This document shows, piece by piece, positions 3,824 to 51,200 of a stretch of DNA of 64,000 nt. Under the pieces are notes generated by a model, which did no database searches, had not been told where the DNA came from, and saw nothing but the letters and a program-made list of their open reading frames with translations. Numbering within the stretch: position 1 is the stretch's first letter; each line of letters opens with the position of its first letter. Source of the DNA: Octopus bimaculoides (taxonomy: Eukaryota); assembly GCF_001194135.2 (NCBI RefSeq), contig NC_068983.1:124037742-124101741 (forward strand), written 5' to 3'. Made by a program: the position numbers and the translations under genes.

Positions 3824-3911
<88 letters not shown>

Positions 3912-12138: not shown

Positions 12139-12194
<56 letters not shown>

Positions 12195-15853: not shown

Positions 15854-15887
<34 letters not shown>

Positions 15888-24100: not shown

Positions 24101-27100
24101 GCCAAGGCTATGCAAGAGTGTTTGGGGGTCAAAGATGAATTTCTAGTTGAAGGACCCTTGGGTGCCCAAGTGGCCAGACCTCAAACCAATCAACTACAGC
24201 GTTTGTGTGCATGTCGAGAGCAAGGCCTGCAAAGTCCACGACAACAACGTTGACAAGCTTAAGTCTTCCATCAACCATGTATAGGCCAGCATGAGGAAGG
24301 ATGTTGTCCACAACGTACATGACGTTCAGGTCTCACCTGGAGCACATGCTCACCGCCAAGAGTAGCCACATTAATTAACATTAATATTTAAACACACATT
24401 TATATGTTAAAACAATAAAAGCATGCCTAACTGCAACTTCCTTATATTTTTATCCTGCCCTCATTATTGCTACAAGCAGCCATATTACCAATTGCATTAA
24501 TTTCCCCACATCACAAACATGCAAAGATCATAAGCACTTTCCCACTTCTAATTAAATAATAAAAATAGGAAAGATTAAAAAATTATGTAAAATACATGCC
24601 TTGCATTTCCATCCATTCTTTGGTGCTGCTGTCATCACAGGTTTTAAGCAAAATGTATGGTATCCTTTATCACAATTATCACAAAACAGCATTTTACTTT
24701 CCTCACCAGATTGTCTAGAAAAATACAATAAAAAAACACAAACATTTAATATAACTTCAAGCAATAGTCTGCACTCATTTCTAAAGCAATGCAAATTTGT
24801 TAAGTATTCCCTATATAAACATATTATTTTCCAATTAATACAAAGGACATCAACAACGTAGTACTTTGTATGAACAGCTATGGTGAAATTTCCAATTAAT
24901 CTTTTTAAAAAATTCTTTACAGTTTTAATTGCAAAGAAAATAAATTAAATTTTCTCTCTCAGTCATTCATTTACATAACATGGCACTAGAAAGAGGGAGG
25001 AATAAATGTTAAAATCATGAAAATAATAAAGAAACATCAATTATTGTACATCTCATAACTACATCACACATTTCTACCAGCATGTTAACACATGCACAAC
25101 AGAAAGAAAAGAAAAAAGAAGCCTGCTTTATATCCATGTTAATCTGATTTCTTAACAAAATTCACTCATGTATCTAACAGCAAAACTTTGAAGGGTATAA
25201 TTTCACAAAGGAAGTATAGAACTTAAATGTAAATATTACTAAATGCATTGAATTTTAGTATTTTCAGAATAGTAGAAATCACAAGACCTCCAACTTTAGT
25301 AGTTAAAAGTATAATCAATTACTGGGTTTGAAGGTAGGCGCAGCGTCCAGCAGGCACTCCAATGCTGGTGAGAACTGATGTTGTTAATGCTCAATTTAAA
25401 CTGTTGCAAGGTAACAATGAAGAGGAAAGACATAAGCAGGGAGTAAATTTCAGAGGGGGCAATGTTTTGAGAAAGAAGGAATAGGCAGAGTAGTTAGTGC
25501 AGGCTCTAGGTGGGTTGGACAGAACAAAGATGATTAGAGAAGAGTTAAGAGGGTTGGGAGTGCATAGGTGGAAGAGACACAAGATCAACCAACTCAGAGG
25601 AACAGTGGTCATTATAGTAATGATTACAAAAATGGTAGATAAAGGAGACAGAATGCCTGTGGACCAGAGACTGTGAATTTATGTGTGAGTGACTGTACTT
25701 ATTAACTGATAGGCCTTTTTCTGGTTGCAATTTAGGACATCTTTATGTCTAGCAGTAGTATTGTACCCAATGCAGAAACAAGAGTAAATACTCTATTATG
25801 GTCCTCACTTGAGCTTTGTTGAGTATCACAAATTGATGGAAGCAATTATCAGGGTGCAGTCCTAGCTAAATACAGTATGTACTTTTGCTAGAAGGAATCC
25901 TCAATGATAGCAAGGTTTAACACTTTGAACAACTGATTGCTCTAGTTTGAATGCAGCTCATATTTAATGGAGTGCAATGGGGTTTTATTAATAAGGGGCA
26001 TCATTAGATGTCACAGCAAGTATAATGATTAATGTATAGAAAGGAGGGAATGGAGGACAATAAGCCCAAAAGCATGACAGAGTTGACTGAAAGTGGAATG
26101 GAAAGAAGCTTTGTCAATACATCACAATGGTGCAATCTGATAGGAAGCTACTGATTCAAGAAATAAGAGATGAAGGGAGCCCATAAATGGGAAATTTCAA
26201 TAAAAGATTCACAAACCAAATACAGTTGAAAACTTTGCTCATGTCTAGAGCAACAACACTGTTTTTACCAAATGGGTGACATAATTAATGTCTGGCAAAC
26301 TGGGACTCAACATTTTCTCCTAACCAATGAAACACTCAATTTTTCATTCCACATATATTAAAGAAATAGAAAAGATTTGAAAAGTATTAACTTACTTGCA
26401 AGTAAGACATATTTTACATCTTGGACACTGCCACCCTGCTCGTACAGCAGGTTGAACTGCTACTGCTGGTTGTAAACAGTGGCCATGATAATGACCACCA
26501 CAAGTAGTGCAAAATAGCAAAGAACAATTGCCAGACCATTTGCCACATGTAATACAGAGAGCCTGTTGACCAGCTGTAAATGAAATATATGTATAATATC
26601 TGAATAATTTGTTAATGGAAGTAAAATTAAAAATTACGAACTCAATATCAAACATTTAGTTGTGAATAAACAAGAAAACTGAAAAAATCTGATGAAATTC
26701 TTACCAATGGTCTCTGCTTGGTCAGTGTGTTCTGGGCAGAGCAAAGACGGCCCTTTGATATCCTAAAATATTAAAAGTACATACAATAACACTTTTATGA
26801 GAATTTGACCATGCAAAATATCTATAGGATCAGATATTTAAGTTCACAAATAAACTAAATAAAACATTACAAAATGAACATTTAATCACAAATAACACTA
26901 TATTCAAAATACCTTCACTTAATACTAATGTTACCAGTTGAGAACTAAAATATAACCTTAAATAACAAGAAAAACATTTCATATTAGTTAAGCCTATTTT
27001 AAAAAAGAATTCAAAATTTGTCTTAAGTATACAAAAGATTTAATTGAATTTAACAATATTTTTAAATATTGGTCTTAAATTTTGCACAAGGCCAGCAATT

Positions 27101-30100
27101 TTGGGGGTGGAAGTCAATTATATCAACCCCAGTGCTCAACTGGTACTTATTTTATCAATCCTAAAAGAGTGAAAGGTAAAAGTTGACCTTGGCAGAATTT
27201 GAAGTTAGAACATAAAGATAGACGAAATACTGCTAAGCATTTTGCCTGGCATGGTAACAATTCTACCAGCTCCACCACCTTGTCTCAAAAGATATATTCA
27301 AATAACTGACTTACTTGAAAACATCCACTGCTAGCTGCACATGGATAATGATATTTTTTCGTACAACGAGGAATTCTGCAAGTTATTGTTGCGCCGTATC
27401 GATGACAGTAACTGCATTTCTGTAAAATTTGTTTTTAAAATGAACATATGCTATAAATTGTCTAAATAATATTCACAAATTAGTTTCAACATCTAGTTTT
27501 CCCATTCCAACTCTTCCAAAAACTGAATAAACTCAGAAGCTGAAAATGTTGCCATTTTTAATCTAAATCAAGAAATCTACCCTTCTGTTCATGTCTTTAA
27601 CTTGTTCTTTATTTTTCAATTCAAGATTCACTCACTACACAGAAATTACAATACATATACTCTTTTACTTGTTTCAGTCATTTGACTGCGGCCATGCTGG
27701 AGCACCGCCTTTAGTCGAACAAATCAACCCCGGGACTTATTCTTTGTAAGCCTAGTACTTATTCTATCGGTATCTTTTGCCAAACCGCTAAGTGACGGGG
27801 ACATAAACACACCACCATCGGTTGTCAAGCAATGCTAGGGGGGTGGCGTTAGGAAGGGCATCCAGCTGTAGAAACTCTGCCAAATCAGACTGGAGCCTGG
27901 TGTTGCCATCCGGTTTCACCAGTCCTCAGTCAAATCGTCCAACCCATGCTAGCATGGAAAGCGGACGTTAAACGATGATGAAGATGATGATGATGATATA
28001 TACATATATACGACAGGCTTCTTTCAGTTTCCGTCTACCAAATCCACTCACAAGGCTTTGATCGGCCCGAGGCTATAGTAGAAGACACTTGCCCAAGATG
28101 CCACGCAGTGGGACTGAACCCGAAACCATGTGGTTGGTAAGTAAGCTTCTTACAACACAGCCACTCCTGCACTCATAATTCTATGAGAACTGCCACAACA
28201 ACAATCTACACACTACAAGCATGAGCCAACAAGTAAGCCTCTACATATTCACTTGACCTTGTAGAAATAGAAGCCAAATTTTCCTCAAACAAAATTCTAT
28301 ATCTTAACAAAAAGGACACATTTCCCATAAAAGATTATAACGAATGGAATGCCCTTGTTCATAGGTCTACTCAATCAGAGCTGACATTAGGTTAAAAACA
28401 ATAACAATTAATTACCAACAACCATTAAATAATTTACAAGAGGGTTTGCTAAATAAAAACATACTACAAACAGAACGCTTTCAACCAAAACCGGTATATC
28501 TTGTACTTCTTACTCTTCTCTCCATATACTCCAGACTTTTCTTACAGTTTAGACACATGGCCACAAGTTACAATAATTCCTTTAGCAGCTAAAGTCCCAC
28601 AAATCAATGGATCCTGGCAGTATTTCAGCCATTATGAAATAGTATACTCCCAAGTTGACTCTTAAACTCACTATGCTTTTTTTAGAATTTCTTTCTCTTA
28701 AGAATTTAATGTAAAATATGAAAGCATATTCATTAAAAAATCTAATAAAGTTGCCTGCTCTCAGTTTCCATCTAAATTGTGAACTATTTGTCAAGTTGTT
28801 CTATTGCAGCATGTGCTGATGAAAATCTTTGACTACACCTCATTTACCTGGTTGTACTTCAGCTCCATCATTTCTTTATCATTCCTAAAACAGATACCAA
28901 CACACTTTATAATCTCTAACTATACACACTCATACATAAATAACCACATGCTACAGCTCACTTTCAGCCAACCCCAACCACCTTCATAACACACTATTTT
29001 ACCCCTATGTATTTCTGATCTCCCCTGTCACCATACTTTCCTCTCACACCATCCCACATTATCTCTACTGCCATCTATTATATAACACAGTCTACAAAGA
29101 TTTATTATATGGGGAAATAGCAGTGGTCATAATTTTTTTTTTATAAATCAATTTTCAAATGCTAATTAATATCTCTGTACCTACAAAGGTTAATTACATT
29201 GAATCATAGCACAAAAAAGGTTTCAAATCATAATACACAACTTAATCGCAAACCATAGTTCAACTCATTATGTCAGTTTTTCAAATCTTTAATATCTCAC
29301 CCTCTGCTTCTGGCCTTTACAGCTCAATTACTTTATATATGGCATCTCTGCTTGTTAAGATGCTTCATGTTTCATATACAACTAGTTGTATAGCTTATAG
29401 TGGTTTTCAAAACAATATTTTAAATTATACATATTTTTCAAATGATTTAACACAATATTTAGAATTTCAATGTAATTTTAAATAGAAATTGTCAATGATT
29501 TTTAAAAGAAAAAATTACAAAATGACTTACCTGTGTCAAACCGGCAAAAACAGCTCTATCAACAAACTGCAAGCTATCATCATCTCTCATTGTTACACCC
29601 TCAGACCAACATGCACAAGACTGATGACCCCATACATGTCCTGAATTAAATAAAAGACAATTGCATCAAAATATAGCTGATACTTAATAAAAATCATATT
29701 GAAAACATATTTTTTCATACAGCTTCACCACCTACATTTATTGCTATCTTTCAATCTCTTACATTACTCTTTTCTCAATTTCCTTTTGTTGGCATATCAC
29801 TTTCCCAAAATTCCAATATTATTTTCCCCAATCTTGTCCCCTTCACCCATCACTCCACTTAAGCTATTTTTTTCTATTAAATCTCTCTATCAACAGTCAC
29901 TATGTAATTACCCATCACTGTTTTTCTACCATTACTCCTCTCCTACATTTACATTATTATCACTGTTCCTCCCATCATAGCCATACTCAAAACTCCTTTC
30001 ATACTCTCATTCTACTTCACTATATGCCATCATCCTCTCTTCTATTCACCCACTTAGTAATATCTGCCTTGAACAAATGGCAAAAATGTAAAGTAAAGAG

Positions 30101-33100
30101 GACTTTTAGCCCTGCACACAACAAAGTAACCTTCTTAGTGCCAATGCTATAATAAAGTATACTCAGTACGCTCTACAATTTGGTTGGCAAACAGAGACAA
30201 TGTTGCATCAAAAGGATTCTTTTGTCATACTGAGGACATGATAACCTCTTCAATGCTAGTGATGTAATAAAATGCACCTAGTACATTCTGTAAAGTAACT
30301 GATGTTAAGAAGAACATCTAGCCACAGAAACCACACCAAAAATGGAATGTACTATCAAGATGGTTCATCACACACCTAGGAGGACAGTAACTCCAAATGA
30401 AAACTGACTTAGAATGTAATAATCCATGCCAAGAAGGTAAATGAAGAATGTCAAAAGGTGGTGGAGGTGATGAAGATTTTTCTATCAAATTATTGAAAAT
30501 ACTAACATAAATCATAAGAAAACATTTTTACAGATTTAAATCATACTACACTAGCCATGCTAGCCAAGAAAAAGGGATTATAAACAGTAAAAGAAAGATA
30601 AACCATACACCTTTGATGTTTATGAACTTTTAATTCACAATCAATCACAGTTAAAAAGGACAATGCTCAACACATCTCCAATAGCTGCAGATCCTTCTAC
30701 TTCAGGAGAATATGTTATTACAGTTGTTTTGTATCAATAACCTAAACAAATAAATTTGTTTGCAAGTTGCCTGCTTTAATATATTTTAAAACTTCTGGCT
30801 ATCTCATTGCTCTTATAATATCAGCTATTTTATATGACCAGCTTGTTGAAAAGCAGTACACAAAATACCAAACAAAATTTTTTTTATGAAATTCACAAAG
30901 AAATACTAAAAAAAAAAAAATTCAATTAAGTTACCTGTTATTTCATAAACCTGATGCACATCTACATCTTCTGAATGACCAACCAAACTAAGTTCATCAA
31001 CAATTGCCATGGGCCGTCCATCTTCATCGTGAATACTATGAGGATTTGGACGTCGTGGAGATTTACTTCGCTCTCTACAATCACAAAATTACATTGATAC
31101 ATTTCCGTTAAATCAAATACTTTATAAAAATAAATAGAAAAAAACTAAATTTTTATATAAGAAAATAGTCACAGTTTAATAATGATTAAGTATTAACAAA
31201 GAAACAAATGTTTATACATCCTCATGAAGGAGAATATACTTAGAACTCAATTATTAAGTAAGTCATTTGTCAAAACAAAAATTTAAGTCTGTCTGAAAAC
31301 TACAGGATCATGTGGTGGAGCAGCTCCCAGTTTCTCAGATGTTTAAGCAACTAAGGTTCCTCCAGAATGGGACACCAGTCCACTGCAAGATTAAACAACC
31401 CCCTCCCCAGCTACTGCTGGAGTACACTTTGGCTGAAGAGACTGGAGGTTGCTCAAGGAGACAACATGCCACTCAATCTGGGAATCAAGCTGATGACTTT
31501 ACAAACATGAATGAGCTTAACACCCAAACCACACCTTAAGCTTAATTATGAACAATAGATATTACCTAGCAGGTCTAGATGGGCCTCTAGGTCTTCTCCA
31601 TGTTAAGTGCTTTGGATTTCTGTCGTTTCCTTTTTCATCAATTTCTGAAGATGTTCTCCTTGCTCGCTGAAGTATCCGCTTGAAAGGATTAAATCCAGGG
31701 GTTGGGTCATATTTTGACAATATTCCTTGACCAAGTAAGCTATTTTCACCACAGTTACAAAAGGAGCATGTACGACTATTACTGTAAAATGAAAAGAATC
31801 AAAGAAAATTAATTCACAAGATGTTTAATTCAAAAATTTACATATGGAATGAAACTATATAATTTTACTTCATTAAAAACAAAAATACTAGTGATATCAC
31901 AGCATGAATACTAATAACCTATTCAAATTAGAATATGTATTTAAAAAAAAACACTTAAACATACGTGTTTTAATTTATCGCATTTTCCAGCATACAAGTC
32001 CATTTCTCAGACCCAAATTTACAGCCAAAAAGTAGGTCAACTTATACATCAAGACAACTTTAGGGGACCAAGCAGGATTTGGAAAGAAGGTGATAATGTT
32101 TCAATGTTTACAGTACGTTTATTTTCACACTATATACTAGATCGATGAGTATGCCAGAAAATACGATATTTATATTGAACATATGAAAAATTACCTTAAA
32201 ATTCCACTTGAATTCGAATCTTCAGAAAGTTGCCTGTCAGAAGACTGAATAATGCTGTTATCAATAGCCTCAACACAAGGATTATCTAGAAGCATTAAGA
32301 AAAAAATGTTTTTTCAATTACTATGTATGTTGTTGTTAGTTTTTTTCAGGCATCATCCACTCAACTGAATCTTTCACTAGTATAGTTCCTTTATCCAAAA
32401 TACATATATGAGCACAGATGAGAATAAAGTAATAGCAACAAAAATTCCATTACAAATTGAGCATATATATTTTTAAAAAAGCAATTTCCTATAATAGTGT
32501 AGCTCTTTCTATATCAAGTATACATGGTGAAGAAAAATAGCAACTGTTCCTTATCATTGAGTATATTAATTTCTTTTGACTTATCTCAATAAATCAAAAT
32601 TAAAGGAGAAAGCGTAAATGAATGTTGTAATATCTAGGCATTTCCTGAAGACAATGTAGCATAAGTAAAATGAAACAACCACAGCTGGGAATCAAAAGTA
32701 AATCATATAACATTTTACACTAGAGTAACAGGAAATAGTATTCAACAGTTTTCTTGATTCTTGGATATTAAAATATTACCAAAGTTTTGAAATTGCTGAA
32801 ATGAATGTACAAATAGTGATGAACATGTACAAGCAAGAGATGGAAACCTATCCAAGAAATACATATCTAACTGTTGCAGTAATTATATTTTCTGATGATA
32901 GCAGTTTTCAACAATGGATTGGTCACTAAAGAACAGTAATCAGCAAAACAATAAATTAATATTTGCTGCCTTTCTACAGATGAACTTTCTTCTGTGGCTT
33001 TTCAAGTTAAAAAAATTGCTGTTGAAACAAAATTGTAAGTTCACCCAACGACAGTTGAATCAAGCAGTGCTAGAACTGTTTGATAAGACCTAGCCTAAAA

Positions 33101-36100
33101 ATTCAGTCTAATTTGAGATAACTGAACTTCAGGGCAAACATAAATTATTTCAATCATTTTATTCTGCATCATATTAGGAAAGTACTTCCCACAAGACATT
33201 GATGGAGACAGTTTCAAAGGATTTGGCTAATAAATGTTAGTCTTGCAAATACTGTAATGTAAATATTCTGCTAAATTACTGCCTAAGTTAATGAAACCTC
33301 AAAAATAAAGCATGACTGATGACTCAAAACAAAAGATGGGGGGGGGGGAATAATTGGTTAATTTAAATCACTATCAACAGAAGATACAAATTTTCAATCA
33401 AGAAATGCAGTAAAAATGAATAAAACAAAACTAAATACTATTTTTCTAAACAATTAAGATCATTAATAAAAAATTACCTCCAGATGGTGTTTCTGATAAT
33501 TCTGTCTCAGTTGATTCATCAGCAAGGATATCAAGAATTGAACTTGGGATAGCTTCAGTTGTTGTAGGAATAGTAGTAGATAAACTCATAGTTGTAGAGT
33601 CTTGAAGTTTGAACACGGATGCATCAACACTTTCAGTAGGTATATCCATTGCAATATCGGGACTGAAACTCTCAACAACAGGGTTATATTTGGGTTTACG
33701 TCCAGTTTTTACTCTCCTGAAAATTCAATAAAAACTCTATATATATTTTCCTTATATATGTAAAAAATATACAGGAAATATCTAAAATTTGTCAGAATTT
33801 TTCAAATTATATTAACTTTTTACATGCTTGTCATTTTAAAAAATCCATATATAATTAGAGATTTTGAATTCTAATACATTATCTAAACAAAATTGTCCAT
33901 TACATATTCAAATATTATACTATATTAGTTTTAAGACTATATCAGAAACAAAAATAAATTGACAAGTTACAGTTTTCTTTTTTCAATTCATAAATTTCTC
34001 AACAACAAATATGGATATTATTTAATTGAAATAGGGTTCAATATTTGTTGAACCCATGATACAGCATAATGTTGAGTGTAGAAATAGTGAAATAACTAAA
34101 AATTTTCTGTTAACAATTCTTTTAAACAGGAAAATGAAGAGATCAATCAAATCAGAAATGGCCATTATCAAATATTAAAACTATAAAATATTTGTATATA
34201 CTTTCTATTTTATTCGTTACTATTCATAAACAATTTTGAAAAGACCACTCACGTTTTTTTCTTAACTAAATGTGATGGGGTTCCAACCGATTCTTTTCTA
34301 GGCCTGCCTGGTCCTCGCTTCTGTTGAATTCCACCAATATTTTCATTCAAATCCCCAGCAGTACTCGACTGAGAAGAATCCATTGTTGCAGAAGACAGTA
34401 AGCCCTCAGCTTCCAAAAACATATTTGGAGAAGATTGCAATTCACTATCAGATTTATTCTGTGAGTCATCAAAATATGTACTCCTATCAACAAAACTACT
34501 TGTTTTACTTTCTTTGGCATCCATGTTCTCGTCATATTTTAATTCAGCTTGTTCTAAAGAAAGTTGTTGCAGTAATACTGATTGGGATTTGGGAGATGTA
34601 GTTTGTTCTAAGGAAGATACAGAATGAGCTTGAGTAGATCTGCATGAAGAGAGGTTTTGCTCATTTGATGCCTCATTATCAGGTTCCCAATCCATTTCTT
34701 GTGATAGGGACTGTTCTGACAAAGGATGACTCGAAGAAGATTCTGAGCATTTTGGAGACTGGTCAATTTGCAATTGTCTTCTTTCTGGTTTCTGTTGCTT
34801 AGAGCTTTCAAACTCATATTGTAATTCTTGAAATCGTTCAGTAAGAGGACTTTCTGAAACACAATGTAGATTCGAGTTTTCTGTAGAAACACTTCCTTTT
34901 GTTAATTCATTGACATCTGATTTTTCTCTCTGCTGCAGTAGAAGATTCTGATCAAAGTTATTATCCACATCAGATTTTGTTTCAGATTCTACTATAAATT
35001 CCTGATTCAAATGAGTATCTTTCTTTCCTAAGTCTTGTACTTCTTCATTTAATGTTAGTCCAGCTGTTAGAATCTCTGCTCCTGGGGAAGATTTTTCATT
35101 ATCTGTTGATTGACCTGACATTTCAATAGACTGAACTGAATGCAAGTCTTGTTTTGTGCTACATCCAGATACTAACTCTGATTTATTAGCTATAATAAAT
35201 TGTTCCTGTTCAGTTGTTTCACTACTAGCAATTTCTGGTTTCATTTCCTGAGCATGTAATTCAGATGCAGAACCTGAAATAGATTCTACATCTGATTTTT
35301 CAGAAGAAACTAAATGCAAGTTTGTACTCACAAATGAAACAGATCGTATCTCTGATTCTTGAGTATCAACTGATTGTATTTCAGACCAAGTTGATTGTTG
35401 GGTAAGCTCAGATGCTGGAAGAGATTCAAGCTGTATCTCAACTGCTGAGACAGTTTGTACTTCAGTATCTGTAGATGGTTTACTCAATGACACACTGAAC
35501 TGAGGAGCATTTTGTTCTGATTCAGTAACTTGATATAGTACCATCTCTTTTTCTTCTTGTGCCTCATGGAAAAATTTCCCTTCTTCGATTTGTTGATCAC
35601 TCATTCCTATTGAGAGTGTTTCTGGAAGAGTTACTGAAACTACATCTTGCTTAACTGTTTGGAAAGTATAAAATCGTTGATCTTGTTCAGTTGTTAGTGG
35701 ATGATTGCCAAGATTTTCTTCAGTAGAAACCTGTGGCTCTTCAACTGATAATGCACTTTGTTGCTCAGAATCTGTTTCAGAAAAGAGGGTTTGAGTTATT
35801 TCAGAATGTTGTTCGTGTTCTGGTACAGGCTGTTCAACTTTAAGATCAGATGCAGTGTGTAAAGACTGCCTTTGTTTAAATTCTGATAGAGAACCTATGT
35901 GCTGATTTTCTGTTTCATTTTGATGTTCATTTTCTGGAAGTTGTTTCTCTACTTCTGATTTTGTACATAATTCTACAGCCTGATTGGTTTCTGACTCTGA
36001 ATTTTGTTGCACAGATGACACAATTTGCTCTTGCTGTTTTATCAACTCTGAAAGTGTTTGTGATTTTTCCTGTTGATTTTGCTCTAAAGATTCTGAAAAG

Positions 36101-39100
36101 GTTTGTTGATCTGATTCTATTATATTTTGCTGCTGAGAATCAATATCAGAAACAACTGCCTGTAGCTGCTCAGTTTCTACAATTGGTTCCTTCTGATCAC
36201 ATTTTAACACCATTTCCTGTGACTGCTCCATTTCTGATATCTCTGCTACTTCATAATTAGGCATAATTTCTTGTTGCAGTTGCTCACTATTAGATACCAT
36301 TTCTTGCAACTGGTCATTTTCCAACAACATTTGCTGCTGCTCAACTTCTGACACTGTTACTTGCATTTGAACAGCTTCAGATGGCAATTGCTGCTGCTGC
36401 TGCTGCTGTTCAACTTCAGATACTATATGTTGTTGCTGTTCAACTTCAGATACCAGCTGATGCTGCTCTGGTGCAGATTCAGACAAGTGTTGCTGCTTGT
36501 ATTCAACTTCAGCCATTGCCTGTTGCTGCTCAACTTCAGACACCATTTCTTGCAGCTGCTGCTGATGCTTAATTCTAGATACCATCTCTTGCAACTGCAT
36601 AGCTTCCGGTATTTGCTGCTGAAGATCACTTACCATCTCCTGTAAATGTTCGACTTCAGACACATCTTGCAACTGCACGGTGTCAGATATGTGCTGTTGC
36701 TGGTCAACTTCAGAAACTTGCTGCTGCTCAACTTCAGAAACCAGCTCTTCATGCTGCTCCTCAATTTCAGAAATTATCTCCTGTGGTTGCTGTTCAACTT
36801 GAGAAACCATCTGTTGCTCTATTTCTAATATTACATGAGCCTGTTTCTCTTCATTCACTATCTGCTGTTTCTTGTCACTTTCAGATATCATATGAGGCTG
36901 CTCGACTTCTGAAACTATATGGTGTGATTGCAAAATCTCATGCATCTGCTCATTAGCTGGTGATTGTTGTGATGACACAATTTGCTGGTGCACACCTTCA
37001 CTCATCTGCTGTTGCTGCTGCTGCTGCTGCTCTCCTTCAGACAATACATACTGTTGTTGCTGAGGAACTTCTTCAGACAAAATCTGCTGTTGTGGAACTT
37101 CTTCAGATAAAATCTGTTGCTGTTGCTCACCTTCGCACACTATCTGTTGTAAATGAACCTCACCATCACAAACAATCTGTTGAAACTGCTGCTCACTTTC
37201 ACACACAATACTCTGCTGCTGATAACCTTGGAACCTAATTTCTTGATCAGATATTTCAGATGCAATTTCCTGTTGTTGCTCATCGATACATAACATCTCC
37301 TGTTGGTTGTCACTTTCAGAAACAACTGATTCAATTTCTTGTTGTTTGTTTTCAGACACTTCTTGTTGCAATTCACTTTGGGATATAATTTTCACTGGTT
37401 CTCCTGAAACAATTTCCACTTGCTGTTGTTTAATATTCTCAGATAATATCTGTTCTTGAGGCATATCATCAATCCCTACTAATTGCTGACTATTATTTTC
37501 TGATAATATTTGAGGTTGCTGACCTGGTGTGGTAACAATTTGTTGCAACACACTTTCCATAACAATTTCTTGCTGTTGAACAATTTGTTGCTGTTCAGCT
37601 TCAAGCACAATCTCTGGTTGCTGTTGTTCAGTTTCCAATACAGTTGGCTCAGCTTCTGATACAGTTGCATCAGCTTCTGATAGATCCTGCTCTGCTGTTG
37701 AGATTTCCAATTGATCAGGTAAAATTCCCACATGCTGTTCAGATGTAGACACAATCTGTTGTTGATCTGATTTAGATATAAGTTGAGCTTTTTGATGATG
37801 TCCAGATTCCAACAAAATTGGTTGTTGCTGAGTAAATGTAGATTCTGACACAACTTGTAATACTTCCTCTGATTCTGTCAGAATAGGTTGCCATTGTTCA
37901 TACTTTGGCGAAGTCTTCTGTTGTTGCCCTTCTTTACATATAAACTCTGATTGTTCATCAGGTTCATAATTTTGCTGCTTTTCATCAAACTGTTGTAGCT
38001 CCTGCTCTGGCTCAGGTATAAACTGTGTTTGTTCAGGAATAAAGTGCACTTGCTGTTCTTCAATATCTGGAATAAACTGTGTCTCATGCTCTGCATGAGG
38101 TATAAACTGTAATTGCTCATGTGAAGTTAAATGAGATGGTATCTCTTCTGATACACAGTGCAGTTGCTCTTCTGTGATAGCTGGTTGCTGTTCTTCTGAT
38201 ACATATTGCTCATGTTGTTCTTGCAATTCAAACTGCATGTGTTTTTCAGATGAAAATTCTGTTGTTTGATCTCCAGACTCAAACTCATTTTGCTGATCAT
38301 GAGAGGCAAATTGCACTTGCTGCTCCTCGGAAATAAACTCAACTTGCTGCTCTTCAGAGATGAACTCAACTTGCTGCTCCTCAGAAATGAACTCAACTTG
38401 CTGCTCCTCAGAAATGAACTCAACTTGCTGCTCTTCTTGTAGTTGTAAGAACTGCACATGTTGCTCATTAGGTATTTGCACAAACTCCATTTGTGGTTCC
38501 TCAGAGATTGTCTCAAATTGCATTTGCTCTTCTTCAGATATTGACTGAATTTGTACTTCTTGAGCTTCAGACTCTGCACCCACAAACTGAGGGATTTGTT
38601 CAGTTTCTGTGGCAAGTTGGGGTAACACTTTTGATGGAGATTGTTCTTCAGAAACCAATGCCAACTGTACTTGCTCATCTGGCACAAAGTTCTTCTGTTG
38701 TTGCTCTGATTCAAGAATGATTGCTTCTTTCTTTGTAGATGTTGCATATTTCTTCTCTTCCTCTTGAAGTTGCTCTTTAGGTACAAATTGTTGTAGATGT
38801 ATAGAATCTTGTAATGTTTGCTGCTGGATTGACTTTTGTATAATGATTTCTGGTAGAATCTGCTGCGAGTCTGAAATTTGTTGCCATTCAGCTGTACATC
38901 TATCTTGCTTGATTTCTTGTCCAGATTCTGGTGTAGAAGAAACCATATGAGTAGATTCTGATTCAACATATTGTGGTTGTTCCGTTTCTGGGTTAATAGT
39001 CTGTTCATATTCATGATCATAATGGGAAACTTGTGTTTGTTCAAATTCTGCCACAGGTATTTGCTGCTGGTTTGAATCTGAATCAAGACTTGGTAAGTGT

Positions 39101-42100
39101 TCTGATCCTGGTGTAACTGGCTTTGCTTCAGATGTAACCAATTGAGAATTTGTCTCTTCCTGTTGAAATTCTGTCTCACAATCTTGTTTGTTTTGTTGCA
39201 TGAATGTTTGATGCAATGTATCTTGAATTTCTGACAAAGATCTATGAGAATTACCCATTTCAACATCATCCACATCTGAAACAGAATCCTGAAGTTTAAC
39301 ATCATGAATAGGCTGAATATTTTGCTCCAGTTCATGTTGCAAACCAGCCTGTGACTCTGGAGAGAAACCTGCTTTGGTGTCTGGCAACACAAGTTGTTGT
39401 ACACCTTCTTGTTGCCCTGGTAAAAGTAGAACATCCTGTGTTTCAAAGTGTTCTGACTGTTCAGTTTGCTCAATTGTTGTTGGTTGAAATAATACCTGTT
39501 CATAGCTTTGTGCTGTTGATAAATCTTGTGAAGTACTTGTTTCCTCGTTCCATAACTGACTATCTTTTGATATTTCTGGTTGTTCTTTATCTTCAAATGA
39601 TTGGCATGGAAGTGGAGGAGATTGCTGAGATGTATTAGAAGGACGTGGAGAAGATACCAAACACTCTGAAGGATCAGTTTGAGTTGAACATAATTGTTGA
39701 TCTTGCTCTTCACTTGTTTGCTGGAGTACTTTACTTTCAGAATTACTCTGCAATTGTGATTGTACGTCATCACCATCATTACTTACAGGAAGATTAGTAG
39801 TTGCAGAATCAGGTAATTCTTCAGGTTCTTGGTGTTTCTCCACCAGCTTTTCTTTTTCTATTAATTGGGCTAAAAAAAGAACAAAACAATTTGCAATCAA
39901 ATATATTAGTACATTTATATGACAAAAAATGGTCTGAAATAAAATATAATGTACATTCCCTGAGAGTAGTTGATAACACTTGCTACCAAGGTGATATAAT
40001 TTGCAGGTTATATATACATATGAGGAAGGATTGCACATTTGCTTTTGCATGTATACATAAATGTTTACATGTAAGTGTGTGTGAGAGAGAGAGATCATTA
40101 TTCCTCATCATTTAACATCTTAATACCCATCTTCCATACTGGCATGGGTTAAATGGCTCAACAGGATCCAACGAGCAAGAAGACTGCAGTGAGCTTCATA
40201 GTCTACTTTGGCATAGTTTCTGCCACATTGAATTCCATTTGATCCATGTGAGCATGGAAAAGAGTAAACAATATGTTTGATATAACACAATAATTGTAAA
40301 TGAGCATCAGTGTTATACAAGCATTGTTATTCATTTCTAATCTAATGTGGAAACATGTCCAGCCATAGGAAAAAATAATTTGCATGGAAGAAAGTGAAGG
40401 TTAGTGACTGGAAGCCATAGAAAATCTACTTCAGCAAATTTCGCCTGAACAAGTATGGAAATGGGGATGTTAAAATAAAGATGATTATATTTTTATATGT
40501 ATATCTGAGTGAGTGAGAGTGTATGTGTACATTGATGTGTGTGGGTACATGATGATACACATGTATATGTGCATATATAAATGTTCATATGCATATATGT
40601 AAGTACATGTGTTTTTATTCATATTGTTCATCATCATTGTTCCTTTATTTTTACATCCGTTTTTCCATATATGGGATAAACAAATACATTAGTAAGGCTA
40701 TTTTTTTTTACAGCCAAATGCTTTTCCTGTCACTAACCCATACCTATTTTACACATACAAGATCTCATATTTCACATGTCTTCAAAGACAAAGTCAGCAA
40801 GCAATTTGGTGATGGGGAAAACGATAATTATGTCGCTCAGCAATTTTTAGAAGTGCAAATGTAAGCAAACACATAGACATACATATATGACAGGCATCTT
40901 TCAGTTTCTCTCTACTAAATCTACTCACAAAACATTGGTTAGTTTGTAGCAATAGCAGAAGACACTCGGTCATATAATTATATTTGTGTGTTTATATAAA
41001 CAAGATGTATATGTAAAACATAAGTGTGATTGTCAAATAAGAGATGAGAGCACTCAACATCAGATTGTTAGTGTAATGTAAAATAATTAACAAGAAATGC
41101 CAAGAATCACATCATAAAATTATATCATAACAACATAATAAACTCATCAGGCATATTAAACAATCTGGATTTGTTGTTATTAAACAAAAACTATTAGAAC
41201 AAAAGGTCTATTCTAGTTTACAAACAGTCCTTGATATGACCTATTCAATTTACAACCATCTGCAGTTACAACCTTTTTTACATTTCTCCACATACACATA
41301 TTTTTTCTTGGCATTCATCTTAGTTCAGCACTCAAATTCAGATATTCCAATATCTGTGCTCAAGCAATATTTTCAAGTGTTTGTTAGCTCACTTTCTCCA
41401 AAGATCATTTATACTTCAGCATTCACATTGCTTATAAGCTATTTTATAAGATCCTCAAGTTTTATTACCCCAAATATATCTTGCAAAAGGAAGCTCGTCC
41501 ATCTAGCAAAATACCAGGCAAGAAACAGAACTTGATCTGAAGGTTAAAATTTAAATTATCAACACAAACGTGAGAAAAAAATAAATGCAATCCTACATGA
41601 TTTGCAGTTGTTTAAATTCAATGATCTCCATTATTATTAAAAATGGCGGTGAGCTGGCAGAATTATTATAGTGCACCGGACAAAATACTTAGCAGTATTT
41701 CACCTGACACTATGTTCTGAGTTCAAATTCCACAGAGGTCAACTTTGCCTTTCATCCTTTCGGGGTCCATAAATTAAGTACCGGTGAAACACTCAGGTCA
41801 ACGTAATCAACTAGACCCTTTCCCCCAAATTTCAGGCCTTGTGTCTTTAGTAGAATGGATTATTAAAAAGCACTAAGAAAAGTTTTAAATGCAGCAAAAG
41901 GTACAGCTATATGCAGTTAACAATAATAATAAAGGACAACAATCTATCATCAAAATAGAGAAATTGTTCATGATCTGGACCAAAATTTAAACATAAAAAT
42001 GTGTACCTAAAACCCTACTAATAATTTAAGCTAAGACAAAAAGCATTTTTGTGACTTTGAAGAAATGAACGAGACGGAGATGCAGATAATTTAATCACTT

Positions 42101-48200: not shown

Positions 48201-51200
48201 TGCTTTAGAAGTCAAGAAAAGTATATTGTAAGAAATAACCGAGAAGAGACACAAAGAATATGTTCTAGCACTACACACTAATCTAGTTTTGATTTGCACA
48301 GTAAGAATGTTTAAACAATTCTGAGGAATAACTGTCAGTAAAATTTCATTTAAGTTTCTATCATACAGCCTTGTGAAAAATATTTTTCATCATGTTTATA
48401 TTTTACAAAATGGAAATTATCAGAATTTTAATTATGATTTTATTTTTTTAAATTTTAAAATGAAAATTTGACTTATTATATTTCAAGCAAGTAAACAATC
48501 AACACTAAAATCTCCATCATCATCATTTTACACCTACTCTTCCCATGCTTGCAAGGGTCAGATGGAATTTGTTAAGGCAAGATTTATTGCCAGATGCCCT
48601 CTGTTGCCAGCCCTTACCTATTTCCAGAAAAGGTATTTCCCCATGGCCAAACATGTCTTTCATGGAAGACTGGAAATGAACAATATCACTTGTATAAGTG
48701 TTGCTCATTTACATCACATGATATCAAAACAAAGTTACGCACACAATGGACTTCTTTCAGTTTCCATCTACCAAATCCACTCACAAGACCCCAGTTGGCC
48801 CAAAAGCAAGTGTCTTCCATTCAATGGGACTGAACCAAAAACCACATGGTTAGGAAGCAAGCTTTTTAAGCCACAGTGTAATATAATATTAAAACTTAAG
48901 TTAGCTAAAAGGTAATTGTAAAAAAATATTCATACTCATCTGATCGTATCATCAATTTAAAATGATTCTAAAATATATACTTTTATTCATCAACCCACCA
49001 TATCATCATTTATCCACTTTCCATGTTGGCATAGGTTAGACAAGTCGTCACAGTTTGAGCTAGATTTTGTTAGGAGTAACTGCCCCACCTCTCCCCAGTG
49101 GCCAGGGATCCATGCCTCTAGTCCATTTTCATCAGCCATTTTTTCTACAGCTGAATGTCCTTCCTAACACCAACTATTTTACAGAGTGTATTGGGTACAT
49201 TTTTCATGGCAACAGCACGAAAGAGGTTGTCAGGTTTTCAACAGGCTAAAAAGTCTTCCTAATCTTATGATATTTCTATACATTCACCAACCACTTTACA
49301 TGACACAGCACTAGAGAGATAATCGCCTTTGCCAAGACAAGAATTATGATCCTCTGAACCCTGTATTTCTGTCTCCGTTCACCTTTCACTTCACAAAATA
49401 TACTGGATGAACTTTATGGTGGCAGCTGGTGATACACTGGGAAGTAATGTTAGCTAGTAAGAGAAAGCACAATTGGATAATTGAGATGACAATGGAAAGA
49501 AAATGAATGATGGATGAGTGATCTTAGTGGGGAGGGGCATAAGCATATGTGTGGGCTTGTTTTTATATTTACACCAGTCAACACATGTCAACTGTTCATT
49601 CATGTCTTGTAACTTAGCAGTTCAGTAAAATAAGTACTAGATTTGAAATGACAGACTAAACTTGAAGCGATGCTCCAGTATTACAACCCAATAACTAAAA
49701 CCAGTAGAAGAATTCAAGCAATTTTTTTAATTTCTGTTATCTAAAGTCTTACATACTTCTTGACCATGATAAGTAGGCTCCTTGAATTTTAGGAATCATC
49801 ATCAAGCACTTTTGCTAAAATAAGGTGTTCCAGGGGCAGACTTCTAATCATAATCATATTTGGGGGGGAGGGGGGCAGTGCTGTGCTTTTACAGCTAAAT
49901 ATAATGCCAACCCTTTTAGTCACATTCTACCAAATTTTACATTTCGTTGTTATTATGCAAAAGTGTCTCATAAGTTCAAAATGTTGCTTTTTTAGAAAAC
50001 AAAAAAATAGTTTCATCATTCCATAGCAAAATTGTTGTACTACACTTTGACAATTTTTGATATTTTGGCATCTGAAGCAGTAGGAGATACGATAGTTTGA
50101 CCAAAAGAACTGGATTAGCAAGCAAAAACAAATATTGAAAAAAGTGCATTTGGCCAAATTTGGACATATGTCAGTTTAACATAATAGCAACAATTTGTTT
50201 ATACAGGTTGTCCCAAAAGTCACTATGAGTTTCAATTTTTAATAACTTCATTAACTTTACAAATAAATACATGCAATTTTGATACAATATAAAGGACATA
50301 ATGAAAATTAATATGCACACAATAGGTGCAGGAGTGGCTGTGTGGTAAGTAGATTGCTTACCAACCACATGGTTCCAGGTTCAGTCCCACTGCATGGCAC
50401 CTTGGACAAGTATCTTCTACTATAGCCTCAGGCTAACCAAAGCTTTGTGAGTGGATTTGGTAGACAGAAACTGAAAGAAGCCCGTCATATATATGTGTGT
50501 GTGTGTGTGTGTATGTATGTTTGTGTCAATATTTGCCCCGCCCCATAATTTCTTGACAAGCAATGCTGGTGCATTTGCATCCCCATAACTTAGCAGTATG
50601 GCAAATGAGACCGATAGAATAAATACTAGGCTTACAAAGAATAACTCCTGGAGTCAATTTGCTCAACTGAAGGTGGTGCTCCAACATGGCTGCAATCAAA
50701 TGACTGAAACAAGTCAAATTTTGCAACACCAATACATCACATATGAAAAATGACCGCATAAATGGCAGCCGTTTTCAGCTTCACATACCTGTTGCTCTTT
50801 CCAAAACTTGCACCATAACACCCTCAAGAGTTTCAGACACCACTTCTCTGAGTTCTCTATTTTTGTTCTCCTTCAGTTACACCAGGGCCTGCGGTTTGTT
50901 GGCGTAAACCCTCTCTTTCAAGAAAAAAATCTGGGCTAGTCAATTCTGGGAAATGTGAAGGCCAGCGACATTGCCGTGGCGGAAGATTATTCTCTCTCCA
51001 AAGCACTGCCATAGTAACTGCATTGTTTCTCTTGCGGTATGAGCAGTTGCCCTATCTTGCTGGAACCATGTGTGAGGTCTACTTTGAATGGCCTTCATGT
51101 CAACAGAGTAATCAGAGAAGTGGGCTCTGAAACTCTTGAGGGTGTTATAGTGCAAGTTTTGGAAAGAGCATAGGTATGCAAAGCTGAAAATGGCTGCCAT

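What the first reader, a model, noticed from the sequence alone, without database searches (positions are those of the whole stretch)
34253..39869. Giant 5.6-kb exon adds about 1,870 acidic E/Q-rich residues ahead of the PHD fingers
One exon encodes a low-complexity domain built from degenerate repeats (EMVSEVEQQQ-like, QQQILSEEVP x2, EEQQVEFIS x4) and ends in an AT-hook. Known: human KMT2C has only a few hundred residues before PHD1, and Q-rich disordered regions of KMT2D drive condensates. The exon is phase 1-2, so it cannot be skipped in frame from the candidate exon 1. Inference: a lineage-specific, repeat-expanded acidic activation, condensate or histone-chaperone-like domain.
Basis: partly seen in the sequence, partly recalled or inferred. 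Interest (0 to 1): 0.7.

Follow-up and report, generated by a model that had tools for sequence, protein, structure and literature searches.

The report
Giant acidic exon in octopus KMT2C/D
A single 5.6-kb exon adds about 1,870 disordered, strongly acidic Q/E-rich residues ahead of the AT-hook and PHD fingers of an octopus enhancer histone methyltransferase (KMT2C/D); it is conserved under purifying selection from Octopus to Argonauta, but public annotations cut it into separate "hypothetical" genes and its function is untested.

Summary
On the minus strand, 39869..34253 is a 5,617-nt exon inside a 1,951-codon stop-free run. It has an AG acceptor and a GTGAGT donor, enters in phase 1 and leaves in phase 2. 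It encodes 1,871 residues (Q 18%, E 15.5%, S 12%, net charge -281) and ends in KRGPGRPRK.

It reads in frame, with no stops, through six AG/GT exons into an ePHD and PHD fingers whose best solved match is human MLL3. An orthologous exon with the same splice sites and phases exists in Argonauta hians (65% amino-acid identity, dN/dS 0.26) and in Octopus vulgaris (96%, dN/dS 0.29). Introns do not align between Octopus and Argonauta.

Both public annotations split the exon off as a "hypothetical" gene. The O. vulgaris 6,436-aa model nevertheless starts inside the exon and must splice out of it.

Only the central ~40% is a decayed tandem array of (M/I)VSEVEQQQ units. A 145-residue island holding five QVE[FY]ISEE copies is the most constrained part (dN/dS about 0.07).

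Composition tests do not support an acidic activation domain, a poly-SIM array or a histone-chaperone tract. The exon is a real, octopod-conserved N-terminal disordered extension. Whether it exists outside octopods, and what it does, remain open.

The parts
34253..39869 (-). Giant exon 2 (5,617 nt; 1,871 full codons plus two split codons) encoding the acidic Q/E/S-rich N-terminal extension
   Evidence: Stop-free run, AG acceptor and GTGAGT donor. Orthologous exons in Argonauta (L001:3289-8830) and O. vulgaris (L002:30709-36264) have the same boundaries and phases. The block conserved with Argonauta is 39889..34243, so conservation stops at the splice sites.
56041..56047 (-). Candidate coding part of exon 1: ATGTCAG|gtaag (M, S, plus the first base of Ala). 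An in-frame TAA lies directly upstream of the ATG.
   Evidence: This is the start of the O. vulgaris model P0070 (MSA-QLIEKEK...). The same 19-mer occurs in the window. Its end phase (1 base) fits the giant exon. It is not conserved detectably in the 3.3 kb available upstream in Argonauta, so it stays provisional.
38185..38619 (-). Most conserved island (exon residues 417-561), including five QVE[FY]ISEE units and flanking Q-x-x-F motifs
   Evidence: 85% and 82% identity to Argonauta in two adjoining blocks. dN/dS is 0.07 for alignment columns 401-600. The 27-nt tandem repeat lies at 38315-38433. AlphaFold2 on residues 400-640 gives mean pLDDT 35.
36245..37640 (-). Decayed in-frame tandem array of (M/I)VSEVEQQQ-like units, with QQQILSEEVP x2, QQIVC[ED]GE x3 and short polyQ runs
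   Evidence: the repeat finder families D1-D4 and D6: up to 20 copies at 60-83% identity, all spacings multiples of 3. TRF rows. The motif [VILMF][VILMF]S[DE] occurs 22 times against 2.5 expected.
34273..34485 (-). Conserved C-terminal block of the exon (residues 1795-1865), ending in the AT-hook KRGPGRPRK (34294-34320)
   Evidence: 79% identity to Argonauta over 71 columns, with the AT-hook itself invariant. dN/dS is 0.19 for the last alignment segment.
33478..33716 (-). Exon 3 (T-RVKTGRKPKYNPVVESF...ETPSG)
   Evidence: AG/GT sites. It takes the 2 bases AC left by exon 2 (AC+G = Thr). In Argonauta the same junction reads AT+T = Ile and then RIKSVKKPKYSPVVES. Conserved block.
32195..32285 (-). 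Exon 4 (DNPCVEAIDNSIIQSSDRQLSEDSNSSGIL)
   Evidence: Phases fit. The junctions are identical in the Argonauta model P0001.
31566..31781 (-). Exon 5 (pre-PHD CSFCNCGE...RPRGPSRPAR)
30935..31074 (-). Exon 6 (ERSKSPRRPNPHS...EITG)
29531..29640 (-). Exon 7 (HVWGHQSCACWSEGV...GLTQ), first part of the ePHD
   Evidence: Pfam zf-HC5HC2H, E = 7e-10.
27315..27419 (-). Exon 8 (KCSYCHRYGATITC...SSGCFQ), second part of the ePHD
26705..26762 (-). Exon 9 (DIKGPSLLCPEHTDQAETI)
   Evidence: Present in the Argonauta model P0001. Conserved block.
26396..26573 (-). Exon 10 (PHD finger: AGQQALCITCGK...CKICLTCK). Further PHD exons lie near 24.7, 23.1, 12.3, 9.9, 9.6 and 6.7 kb.
   Evidence: The best solved-structure match is the human MLL3 homolog PHD pair 2ysm, E = 9e-40, followed by KMT2D.

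Best explanation
Window 39869..34253 (minus strand) is exon 2 of the octopus ortholog of KMT2C/KMT2D (the MLL3/4, Trr/Lpt-type enhancer H3K4 methyltransferase).

Gene structure (shown):
- A 7-nt coding tip of exon 1 (ATGTCAG, about 16 kb upstream) probably supplies Met-Ser.
- The giant exon then supplies about 1,870 residues.
- It splices in frame to exon 3 and onward to the pre-PHD/ePHD and PHD fingers.
- The conserved N-terminal AT-hook therefore sits at about residue 1853 and the first zinc-finger cysteine at about 1990.
- The O. vulgaris model lengths imply a full protein of about 7,200 residues.

Nature of the extension (shown):
- It is predicted to be disordered and has no known domain.
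- It is a polyanion, with net charge about -281 and almost no Arg.
- Its middle arose by in-frame tandem expansion of a 9-12-residue (E/Q)n-hydrophobic-hydrophobic-Ser-Glu unit.
- It has been kept as an open reading frame under moderate purifying selection since Octopus and Argonauta split. About 37% of residues lie in conserved islands, separated by fast-evolving E/Q spacers with many in-frame indels.

Function (inferred, about 40% likely in this form):
- The tail is a multivalent docking and spacing region.
- Its conserved islands, above all the five QVE[FY]ISEE units and the block just before the AT-hook, would be short linear motifs for partner proteins.
- Its charge would tune how the adjacent AT-hook/PHD reader module engages DNA and basic histone tails. 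Possible routes are electrostatic competition or auto-inhibition, and altered nuclear partitioning.
For: Coding:
- 1,951-codon stop-free run against a maximum of 146 in shuffles.
- Third codon positions diverge most: identity to Argonauta is 0.77, 0.85 and 0.63 for positions 1, 2 and 3.
- dN/dS is 0.256 against Argonauta at dS 0.84, and 0.29 against O. vulgaris at dS 0.066.
- All of the many indels against Argonauta keep the frame.

Exon boundaries:
- AG and GTGAGT sites.
- Argonauta has the same acceptor context (cag|CCCAATTAAT) and a donor at the same codon position, AT|GTAAGT.
- blastn between the two genomes aligns exons only. The big block ends within 20 nt of the acceptor and 10 nt of the donor.

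Splicing into KMT2C/D:
- Six successive junctions are phase-compatible and give 2,172 codons without a stop.
- The exon 2/3 junction is also open in Argonauta.
- The junctions of exons 3-9 equal those of the Argonauta model P0001.
- The O. vulgaris annotation was built with Iso-Seq and RNA-seq (PMC10700109). It has a 6,436-aa gene whose CDS starts at the first ATG of the giant exon's frame after an assembly frameshift (L002:33014). That CDS would hit the TGA formed by the donor unless it splices there.

Gene identity:
- Pfam zf-HC5HC2H in the downstream exons.
- Best PDB matches are the MLL3 homolog (E = 9e-40) and KMT2D.
- Relatives in the protein search are named KMT2C-like or MLL3.

Disorder and novelty:
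- No Pfam family in the exon and no PDB sequence match.
- AlphaFold2 mean pLDDT 35 on the best-conserved part.
- The exhaustive HMMER search found only the O. vulgaris fragment plus one spurious repeat protein.

Island-and-spacer layout.
Against: - I examined no transcript or peptide directly. Splicing rests on phase, on conservation and on one evidence-based gene model whose exon table I could not read.
- Both public annotations treat the exon, or its first third, as a separate 'hypothetical' gene.
- The O. vulgaris assembly carries a 5-bp tandem duplication that breaks the frame at about codon 553. If that is real and fixed, the first ~790 residues would be dispensable in that species.
- Exon 1 is provisional.
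- An internal promoter or an alternative first exon that bypasses the giant exon cannot be excluded.
- The functional part is inference from composition and conservation only. The specific function classes I could test came out negative.
- AlphaFold2 was run on a single sequence, which is weak evidence for disorder.
Confidence: 0.85

Rival explanations
1. The ORF is an independent single-exon (or two-exon) gene for an acidic protein that happens to lie upstream of KMT2C/D, as annotated in Argonauta hians (1,852 aa) and in part in O. vulgaris (581 aa).
For: Gene calls in L001 (2937..8834) and L002 (10001..32447). The source names P0070 'hypothetical predicted protein'.
Against: - The 'stop' is the TGA or TAA created by the donor consensus G|TGAGT or G|TAAGT in both lineages.
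- The reading frame has no start of its own at its 5' end. It begins at a conserved polypyrimidine-AG acceptor.
- It ends in the AT-hook that belongs to the KMT2C N-terminus, 537 nt from exon 3, and the phase is compatible in both lineages.
- The Argonauta downstream model is flagged partial and starts inside exon 3.
- The O. vulgaris split coincides exactly with a 5-bp frameshift in that assembly.
Confidence: 0.04
2. The exon is real but optional. The main KMT2C/D isoforms would start from a promoter or first exon downstream of (or skipping) the giant exon, and the long form would be tissue- or stage-restricted.
For: Nothing excludes it. The O. vulgaris assembly tolerates a frameshift in the exon. 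Large chromatin-regulator genes often have internal promoters (general knowledge).
Against: - Skipping from a coding exon 1 shifts the frame, since 5,617 mod 3 = 1.
- The AT-hook, a conserved KMT2C N-terminal feature, is encoded only inside this exon.
- dN/dS is 0.26-0.29 along the whole length, with no relaxed segment. This argues for regular use.
Confidence: 0.2
3. The extension is a classical acidic transcriptional activation domain, with aromatic or leucine residues held exposed by acidic residues, that recruits Mediator or p300-type coactivators.
For: Strong net negative charge. The conserved island has F or Y every 9-11 residues in an acidic context. One tile in the VEFISEE array (residues 473-511) passes the published rule.
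Against: - Rule of PMC10550315: 39-aa tile with charge <= -9, W+F+Y+L >= 7, plus a diagonal limit.
- Only 1 of 1,833 tiles passes in the window and 0 of 1,808 in Argonauta. Composition-matched shuffles give 4.5 and 10.4 on average.
- The hydrophobic residues are mostly V and I, not W, F, Y or L.
Confidence: 0.15
4. The extension is a histone-chaperone-like acidic tract or a poly-SIM (SUMO-binding) array.
For: Net charge -281. The recurrent hydrophobic-hydrophobic-Ser-Glu motif (22 observed against 2.5 expected) superficially resembles a phospho-SIM.
Against: - The longest uninterrupted D/E run is 3 residues (5 in Argonauta). Histone-binding acidic tracts are typically long D/E runs (general knowledge).
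- Canonical SIM cores (3 of 4 V/I/L) are depleted: 11 observed against 23 +/- 5 expected.
Confidence: 0.08
5. The long ORF is a by-product of biased composition or a decaying repeat, not a translated sequence.
For: The coding strand is T-poor (24.5% T). A second sense frame also stays open for 551 codons.
Against: - Frame 0 has 0 stops, against 66 and 214 in the other two sense frames.
- Codon-position divergence pattern and dN/dS of 0.26.
- The ORF is preserved across many indels in a lineage whose introns no longer align.
Confidence: 0.01

Closest known systems
Human KMT2C (MLL3) N-terminal region: AT-hook, pre-PHD/ePHD, PHD1-3
   Same: Same order of AT-hook, C-x-x-C pre-PHD, ePHD and PHD fingers. 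The PHD pair matches the MLL3 homolog structure 2ysm at E = 9e-40. The spacing from AT-hook to pre-PHD is about 135 residues here, against roughly 100 in human (from memory).
   Different: In human KMT2C the AT-hook lies at about residues 34-46 (UniProt Q8NEZ4, from memory, not tested here). Here it lies at about 1853-1861. The roughly 1,850 extra residues have no counterpart in Pfam or PDB.
Human KMT2D (MLL4) prion-like / polyQ domain that drives condensates
   Same: A long Q-rich disordered region inside a KMT2C/D-family protein.
   Different: The KMT2D region is at residues 3561-4270, with a polyQ tract at 3898-3974 interspersed with Leu (PMC13584762). It lies in the C-terminal half. The octopus region is N-terminal and carries about 20% acidic residues. 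Its longest Q run is 8 (15 in Argonauta). No sequence similarity was found.
Drosophila Lpt / Trr (split KMT2C/D ortholog)
   Same: An invertebrate member of the same family in which the N-terminal PHD/HMG part has undergone a lineage-specific structural change, in that case gene fission (general knowledge).
   Different: The change in flies is a split into two genes, not an N-terminal addition. No comparison was run here because no long Lpt sequence was retrievable with the tools.
Acidic tails next to DNA-binding modules, e.g. the HMGB1 C-terminal acidic tail (functional analogy only)
   Same: A polyanionic disordered segment in the same chain as a minor-groove DNA-binding element. This is the model for the proposed electrostatic tuning of the AT-hook (general knowledge, inference).
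   Different: The HMGB1 tail is about 30 contiguous D/E residues. The octopus tail is about 1,870 residues of mixed Q/E/S/V/L/I with conserved islands. No homology, and the mechanism is untested.

Membership tests
KMT2C/KMT2D (MLL3/4, Trr/Lpt) histone methyltransferase gene | N-terminal ePHD (C2HC pre-PHD plus PHD-like zinc finger) | tested here: met
   Pfam zf-HC5HC2H E = 7e-10 and zf-HC5HC2H_2 E = 7e-9 on the spliced exons 3-8.
KMT2C/KMT2D (MLL3/4, Trr/Lpt) histone methyltransferase gene | Cluster of PHD fingers most similar to MLL3/MLL4 rather than to other PHD proteins | tested here: met
   Best PDB sequences are the MLL3 homolog 2ysm (9.4e-40) and KMT2D 9yl3 and 9atn (6e-36, 2e-33). DPF3 follows only at 4e-18. 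Named relatives are KMT2C-like or MLL3.
KMT2C/KMT2D (MLL3/4, Trr/Lpt) histone methyltransferase gene | N-terminal AT-hook (GRP core flanked by basic residues) | tested here: met
   KRGPGRPRK at 34320..34294, invariant in Argonauta and O. vulgaris. Equivalence to the human AT-hook is from memory.
KMT2C/KMT2D (MLL3/4, Trr/Lpt) histone methyltransferase gene | HMG box, FYRN/FYRC and C-terminal SET/post-SET catalytic domain | not testable with these tools
   The gene runs off the low-coordinate end of the window. The 6,436-aa size of the O. vulgaris model is compatible, but its sequence could not be retrieved.
Acidic activation domain (acidic-exposure class) | 39-aa tiles with net charge <= -9, W+F+Y+L >= 7 and the diagonal rule (PMC10550315) | tested here: not met
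   1 of 1,833 tiles in the window and 0 of 1,808 in Argonauta pass. Shuffles give 4.5 and 10.4.
Poly-SIM (SUMO-interaction motif) array | Repeated cores with 3 of 4 V/I/L, flanked by acidic residues or Ser | tested here: not met
   Cores are depleted: 11 against 23 +/- 5 expected. Flanked cores number 5 against 2.3 in the window and 2 against 2.6 in Argonauta.
Histone-chaperone-type acidic tract | Long uninterrupted D/E runs | tested here: not met
   The longest D/E run is 3 residues in the window and 5 in Argonauta. The defining feature itself is taken from general knowledge.
Prion-like / polyQ condensate domain (as in KMT2D) | Q/N-rich, low-charge region with a long polyQ tract | tested here: inconclusive
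   Q is 18%, but D+E is 19.6% and the longest Q run is 8 (15 in Argonauta). No prion-domain predictor or phase-separation assay was available.
Intrinsically disordered region with conserved short linear motifs | No stable fold, biased composition, and conserved islands between fast-evolving, indel-rich spacers | tested here: met
   pLDDT 35 on a single sequence, which is weak evidence. No Pfam or PDB match. 37% of residues lie in blocks of 75-85% identity, against 65% identity overall, with 96 + 121 gap columns.

The most novel reading that the evidence does not exclude
The ~1,870-residue polyanionic tail is an octopod- or coleoid-specific regulatory module of the enhancer methyltransferase. 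Its conserved QVE[FY]ISEE array and its pre-AT-hook block would be new docking motifs. Its charge would gate the AT-hook/PHD reader, through auto-inhibition, DNA mimicry or condensate partitioning. Cephalopods would then have rewired how MLL3/4-type complexes are targeted to enhancers.
Probability: 0.15. Interest if true: 0.65.

Novelty: new variant of a known kind. Interest (0 to 1): 0.4.

Why it matters
KMT2C/D proteins mark enhancers in all animals, and their N-terminal reader module is usually close to the protein's start. A conserved 1,870-residue disordered polyanion placed in front of that module is a large, lineage-restricted change to a core chromatin regulator. It occurs in a clade studied for its regulatory and neural novelty.

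There is also a practical consequence. Current public annotations of at least two octopod genomes split this exon off as orphan "hypothetical" proteins. This creates false orphan genes and truncates the KMT2C/D ortholog. The splice-phase and conservation evidence given here is enough to correct those models.

The finding is not a new kind of system. Disordered-region expansions in chromatin proteins are common, and the function here is unproven.

Tried and rejected
1. Word-indexed protein search with the whole exon, and with the exon's C-terminus plus the ePHD. Neither gave a hit. Even the Argonauta protein P0001, which overlaps the second query at about 90% identity, was missed. These negatives mean nothing.

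2. The third search, with the PHD region only, worked. It returned only proteins of 401 aa or fewer, so full-length orthologs and their N-termini could not be compared. The short invertebrate models (Ptychodera, Capitella, Helobdella) start near the pre-PHD and say nothing about N-terminal length.

3. Exact look-up of the 1,949-aa ORF: not on record.

4. Exhaustive HMMER search with exon residues 1-640 plus 1331-1871. It found only the O. vulgaris 581-aa fragment and a fish protein with ELLSEDQNP repeats, which I take as convergent low complexity. It missed the Argonauta 1,852-aa and the O. vulgaris 6,436-aa products. That library therefore also lacks long proteins, and the absence of squid or Nautilus hits is uninformative.

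5. JGI metagenome scan with the two-species alignment: nothing.

6. Pfam on the exon, PDB sequences on the conserved island and Rfam on the window: nothing.

7. Protein self-BLAST for internal repeats gave no off-diagonal hits under composition correction. Nucleotide-level repeat finding was used instead.

8. Search for a conserved exon 1 between the window and Argonauta. The upstream sequence does not align. Argonauta's predicted 13-nt first exon is probably an ab initio guess.

9. Function classes considered and rejected on composition tests: acidic-exposure activation domain, poly-SIM array and histone-chaperone tract.

10. Two literature searches for KMT2C in octopus or cephalopods found nothing on this exon.

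Full report
**1. What is at the coordinates**

The feature lies on the minus strand. A stop-free run of 1,951 codons spans 40104..34252. The next-longest ORF anywhere in the 64-kb window is 144 aa. Shuffles of the same bases never exceed 146 codons. The chance of no stop over that length at this composition is about 1e-62.

The first ~78 codons of the run read through a polypyrimidine tract. The tract ends in the acceptor ...ttgttcttttttt-ag|CCCAATTAAT, so the exon starts at 39869. The run ends at the TGA formed by the donor AAAAAAAC|GTGAGT, so the exon ends at 34253.

The exon is 5,617 nt. It enters needing one base from the previous exon and leaves two bases for the next. Because 5,617 mod 3 = 1, it cannot be skipped in frame.

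**2. Composition and repeats**

The 1,871 residues are Q 18.0%, E 15.5%, S 12.2%, V/L/I about 19%, R 0.9%. D+E is 19.6% against K+R 4.6%, giving net charge -281. Every 100-residue window carries -9 to -23, except the last 70 residues, which hold KRGPGRPRK (34320..34294).

The named repeats are real:
- EEQQVEFIS, 4 exact copies plus 1 degenerate (27 nt x4.4, 38315-38433).
- QQQILSEEVP x2 (30 nt x2.8).
- QQIVC[ED]GE (33 nt x2.7).

The repeat finder also shows up to 20 degenerate copies (60-83% identity) of a unit encoding (M/I)VSEVEQQQ across 36245-37640. All spacings are multiples of three, as expected for a decayed in-frame tandem array.

The four-residue signature [VILMF][VILMF]S[DE] occurs 22 times against 2.5 expected.

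Recognisable repeats cover roughly the central 40% of the exon. The first ~400 and last ~600 residues are biased in composition but not repetitive.

**3. Which gene it belongs to**

Downstream on the same strand I located exons with AG/GT sites at 33716-33478, 32285-32195, 31781-31566, 31074-30935, 29640-29531, 27419-27315, 26762-26705 and 26573-26396. Joined to the giant exon, the first six of these give 2,172 codons with no stop and matching phases at every junction (2, 1, 2, 2, 1, 0).

They encode a C-x-x-C pre-PHD, an ePHD (Pfam zf-HC5HC2H, E = 7e-10) and PHD fingers. The best solved relatives of the PHD fingers are the human MLL3 homolog (2ysm, 9e-40) and KMT2D. Further PHD exons lie down to about 6.7 kb.

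The gene is therefore the KMT2C/D (MLL3/4, Trr/Lpt-type) ortholog. Its SET end lies beyond the window.

With the provisional Met-Ser-Ala start, the AT-hook sits at residue 1853 and the first pre-PHD cysteine at 1990. In human KMT2C the AT-hook is at about residues 34-46 (UniProt, from memory). The extra sequence therefore lies almost entirely between the initiator and the AT-hook.

**4. Comparative evidence: Argonauta**

The PHD-region search returned a partial Argonauta hians protein, P0001. Its locus L001 (GCA_054771915.1) carries an orthologous giant exon at L001:3289-8830 (5,542 nt).
- The acceptor context is the same (cag|CCCAATTAAT).
- The donor is at the same codon position (AT|GTAAGT).
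- The exon 3 junction is also open (AT+T, then RIKSVKKPKYSPVVES).

The two exon proteins align at 64.7% identity over 1,750 positions, with 96 + 121 gap columns, all in frame. The downstream exons are 92.6% identical.

By the Nei-Gojobori method, dN = 0.214, dS = 0.837 and dN/dS = 0.256. Third positions are the most diverged.

blastn between the loci aligns exons only. Introns are saturated. The large block ends at 39889 and 34243, essentially at the splice sites.

About 37% of residues sit in islands of 75-85% identity. The strongest island is residues 417-561, which holds the five QVE[FY]ISEE units. dN/dS is 0.07 for alignment columns 401-600. Next is the last ~170 residues leading into the invariant AT-hook.

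**5. Comparative evidence: Octopus vulgaris**

The exhaustive HMMER search found one true relative: O. vulgaris CAI9719343.1, "hypothetical predicted protein", 581 aa, 97% identical, starting MSA-QLIEKEK.

Its locus L002 (OX597816.1) is 91-95% identical to the window even in introns. Exon dS is 0.066 and dN/dS is 0.29. The window therefore comes from a different Octopus species. The distance is compatible with the O. bimaculoides / O. vulgaris split of about 34 My quoted in PMC10700109, and not with O. sinensis (2.5 My).

The model's first exon is ATGTCAG|gtaag. The identical 19-mer is at window 56047..56029, with a TAA directly upstream of the ATG. It ends in the phase the giant exon needs.

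In the O. vulgaris assembly the giant exon (L002:30709-36264) carries a 5-bp tandem duplication (TGAGC) that shifts the frame at about codon 553. The annotation consequently has two genes:
- A 581-aa gene.
- A 6,436-aa gene whose CDS starts at 33014, the first ATG of the shifted frame.

The shifted frame meets the donor-derived TGA at 36266. A 6,436-aa product is therefore possible only if the model splices at that donor into the KMT2C/D exons. That annotation used Iso-Seq and RNA-seq alignments.

This is indirect but real support for exon 2-exon 3 splicing. It implies a full-length protein of about 7,200 residues (about 790 + 6,436).

**6. What it is not**

- It is not a separate gene. It has no start of its own. 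Its "stop" is the donor consensus in both lineages. It also carries the family's AT-hook.
- It is not a compositional artefact. There are 0 stops in frame 0 against 66 and 214 in the other sense frames, and the frame is under purifying selection. The 551-codon run in a second sense frame is explained by the T-poor coding strand.
- It has no Pfam domain, no PDB sequence relative and no confident fold (AlphaFold2 pLDDT 35 on a single sequence).

**7. Function: what the tests say**

- The published composition rule for acidic activation domains (PMC10550315) is met by 1 of 1,833 tiles here and by none in Argonauta. That is fewer than in shuffles.
- Canonical SIM cores are depleted (11 against 23 expected).
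- The longest D/E run is 3 residues, unlike histone-chaperone tracts.

The best-supported description is a disordered polyanion with conserved short islands between fast-evolving E/Q spacers, directly fused to the AT-hook/PHD reader module.

My preferred mechanism has two parts. The islands act as docking motifs. The charge tunes AT-hook and PHD engagement with DNA and basic histone tails, or tunes nuclear partitioning. This is inference, and I put it at about 40%.

**8. Limits**

- I saw no transcript reads or peptides.
- Exon 1 is provisional.
- Bypass isoforms cannot be excluded.
- The O. vulgaris frameshift may be an ONT-assembly error or a real variant.
- Nothing outside Octopoda could be examined. 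The protein collections evidently lack long proteins: all hits were 401 aa or shorter, and the exhaustive search missed the known Argonauta and O. vulgaris long products. Their silence about squid, Nautilus or other molluscs says nothing.

**9. Verdict**

The structural interpretation, a giant coding exon of KMT2C/D ahead of the PHD fingers that is partly repeat-built, is supported. Lineage specificity is shown only as conservation within octopods. The specific functional labels are unsupported or untested.

This is a new variant of a known kind. It is of moderate interest, and it has an immediate use in correcting gene models.

Noticed in passing
L002:32310-32430 (O. vulgaris OX597816.1), corresponding to window ~38200: The O. 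vulgaris assembly has a 5-bp tandem duplication (TGAGC-TGAGC) inside the giant exon. It is absent from the window and from Argonauta. It shifts the frame at about codon 553, yet the remaining 1,302 codons stay open and dN/dS is similar on both sides (0.34 and 0.28). It is either an error in an ONT-based assembly or a very recent or heterozygous variant.
   Followed up: partly
L001:2937-8834 and 10001-17546 (Argonauta hians BAAFZT010000014.1); L002:10001-32447 and 33014 onward: Public gene models split the KMT2C/D ortholog. In Argonauta the giant exon is a separate 1,852-aa gene and the next model is partial, starting inside exon 3. In O. vulgaris the first third of the exon is a 581-aa 'hypothetical protein'. 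Both create false orphan genes.
   Followed up: yes
window 38127-39779 (-): A 550-aa ATG ORF lies in a second sense frame inside the giant exon. Counterparts exist in Argonauta (563 aa) and O. vulgaris (521 aa). It is most simply explained by the T-poor coding strand (24.5% T), because the codon-position divergence follows the main frame. Dual coding was not tested formally.
   Followed up: partly
window 50940-51200 (-) and 51623-52084 (+): Intron 1 holds ORF fragments that look, by eye, like a mariner/Tc1-type transposase (…FQQDRATAHTA…) and a reverse transcriptase (…FGFVPGKSTTDAIF…YADDLALIA…). The local G+C rise to 0.43 reflects these fragments, not a promoter.
   Followed up: no
window 27658-28164 versus L002:18328-18714: About 350 nt in an intron near the ePHD exons of the window matches, at 93-94%, a segment that in O. 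vulgaris sits in intron 1 upstream of the giant exon. This is an interspersed repeat with different insertion sites in the two species.
   Followed up: no
window 5281-5453, 16982-16991, 22570-22579: Runs of N (assembly gaps) lie inside the KMT2C/D gene region downstream of the finding. Small exons could be missing there.
   Followed up: no
window 37006-37031 and 36389-36408; Argonauta alignment columns ~910-965: PolyQ runs differ sharply between species. The longest run is 8 Q in the window and 15 in Argonauta, and Argonauta has two extra long runs. This indicates ongoing slippage inside an otherwise constrained exon.
   Followed up: partly
window 38315-38433; L001 ~4700-4860: All three species keep five copies of the 9-residue unit. 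The first three copies read VEFISEE in Octopus and VEYISEE in Argonauta. Synonymous divergence is high in this block (dS about 1.2). The pattern suggests within-array homogenisation (concerted evolution) under strong protein-level constraint.
   Followed up: partly
L001:2937-2949: Argonauta's predicted first exon (ATGTCACCAGGGG|gt) also begins ATG-TCA, like the Octopus exon 1 (ATGTCAG|gt). It lies only 352 nt upstream of the giant exon, against about 16 kb in Octopus, and the surrounding sequence does not align. Coincidence or a relocated start was not resolved.
   Followed up: partly
P0071 (Etheostoma cragini XP_034721986.1): The only non-octopod hit of the exhaustive search (E = 1e-5) is a fish protein with about 11 tandem EDQ[NS]PELLS units. 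It aligns to the EEQQVEFIS array. I regard it as convergent acidic repeat composition, not homology.
   Followed up: no
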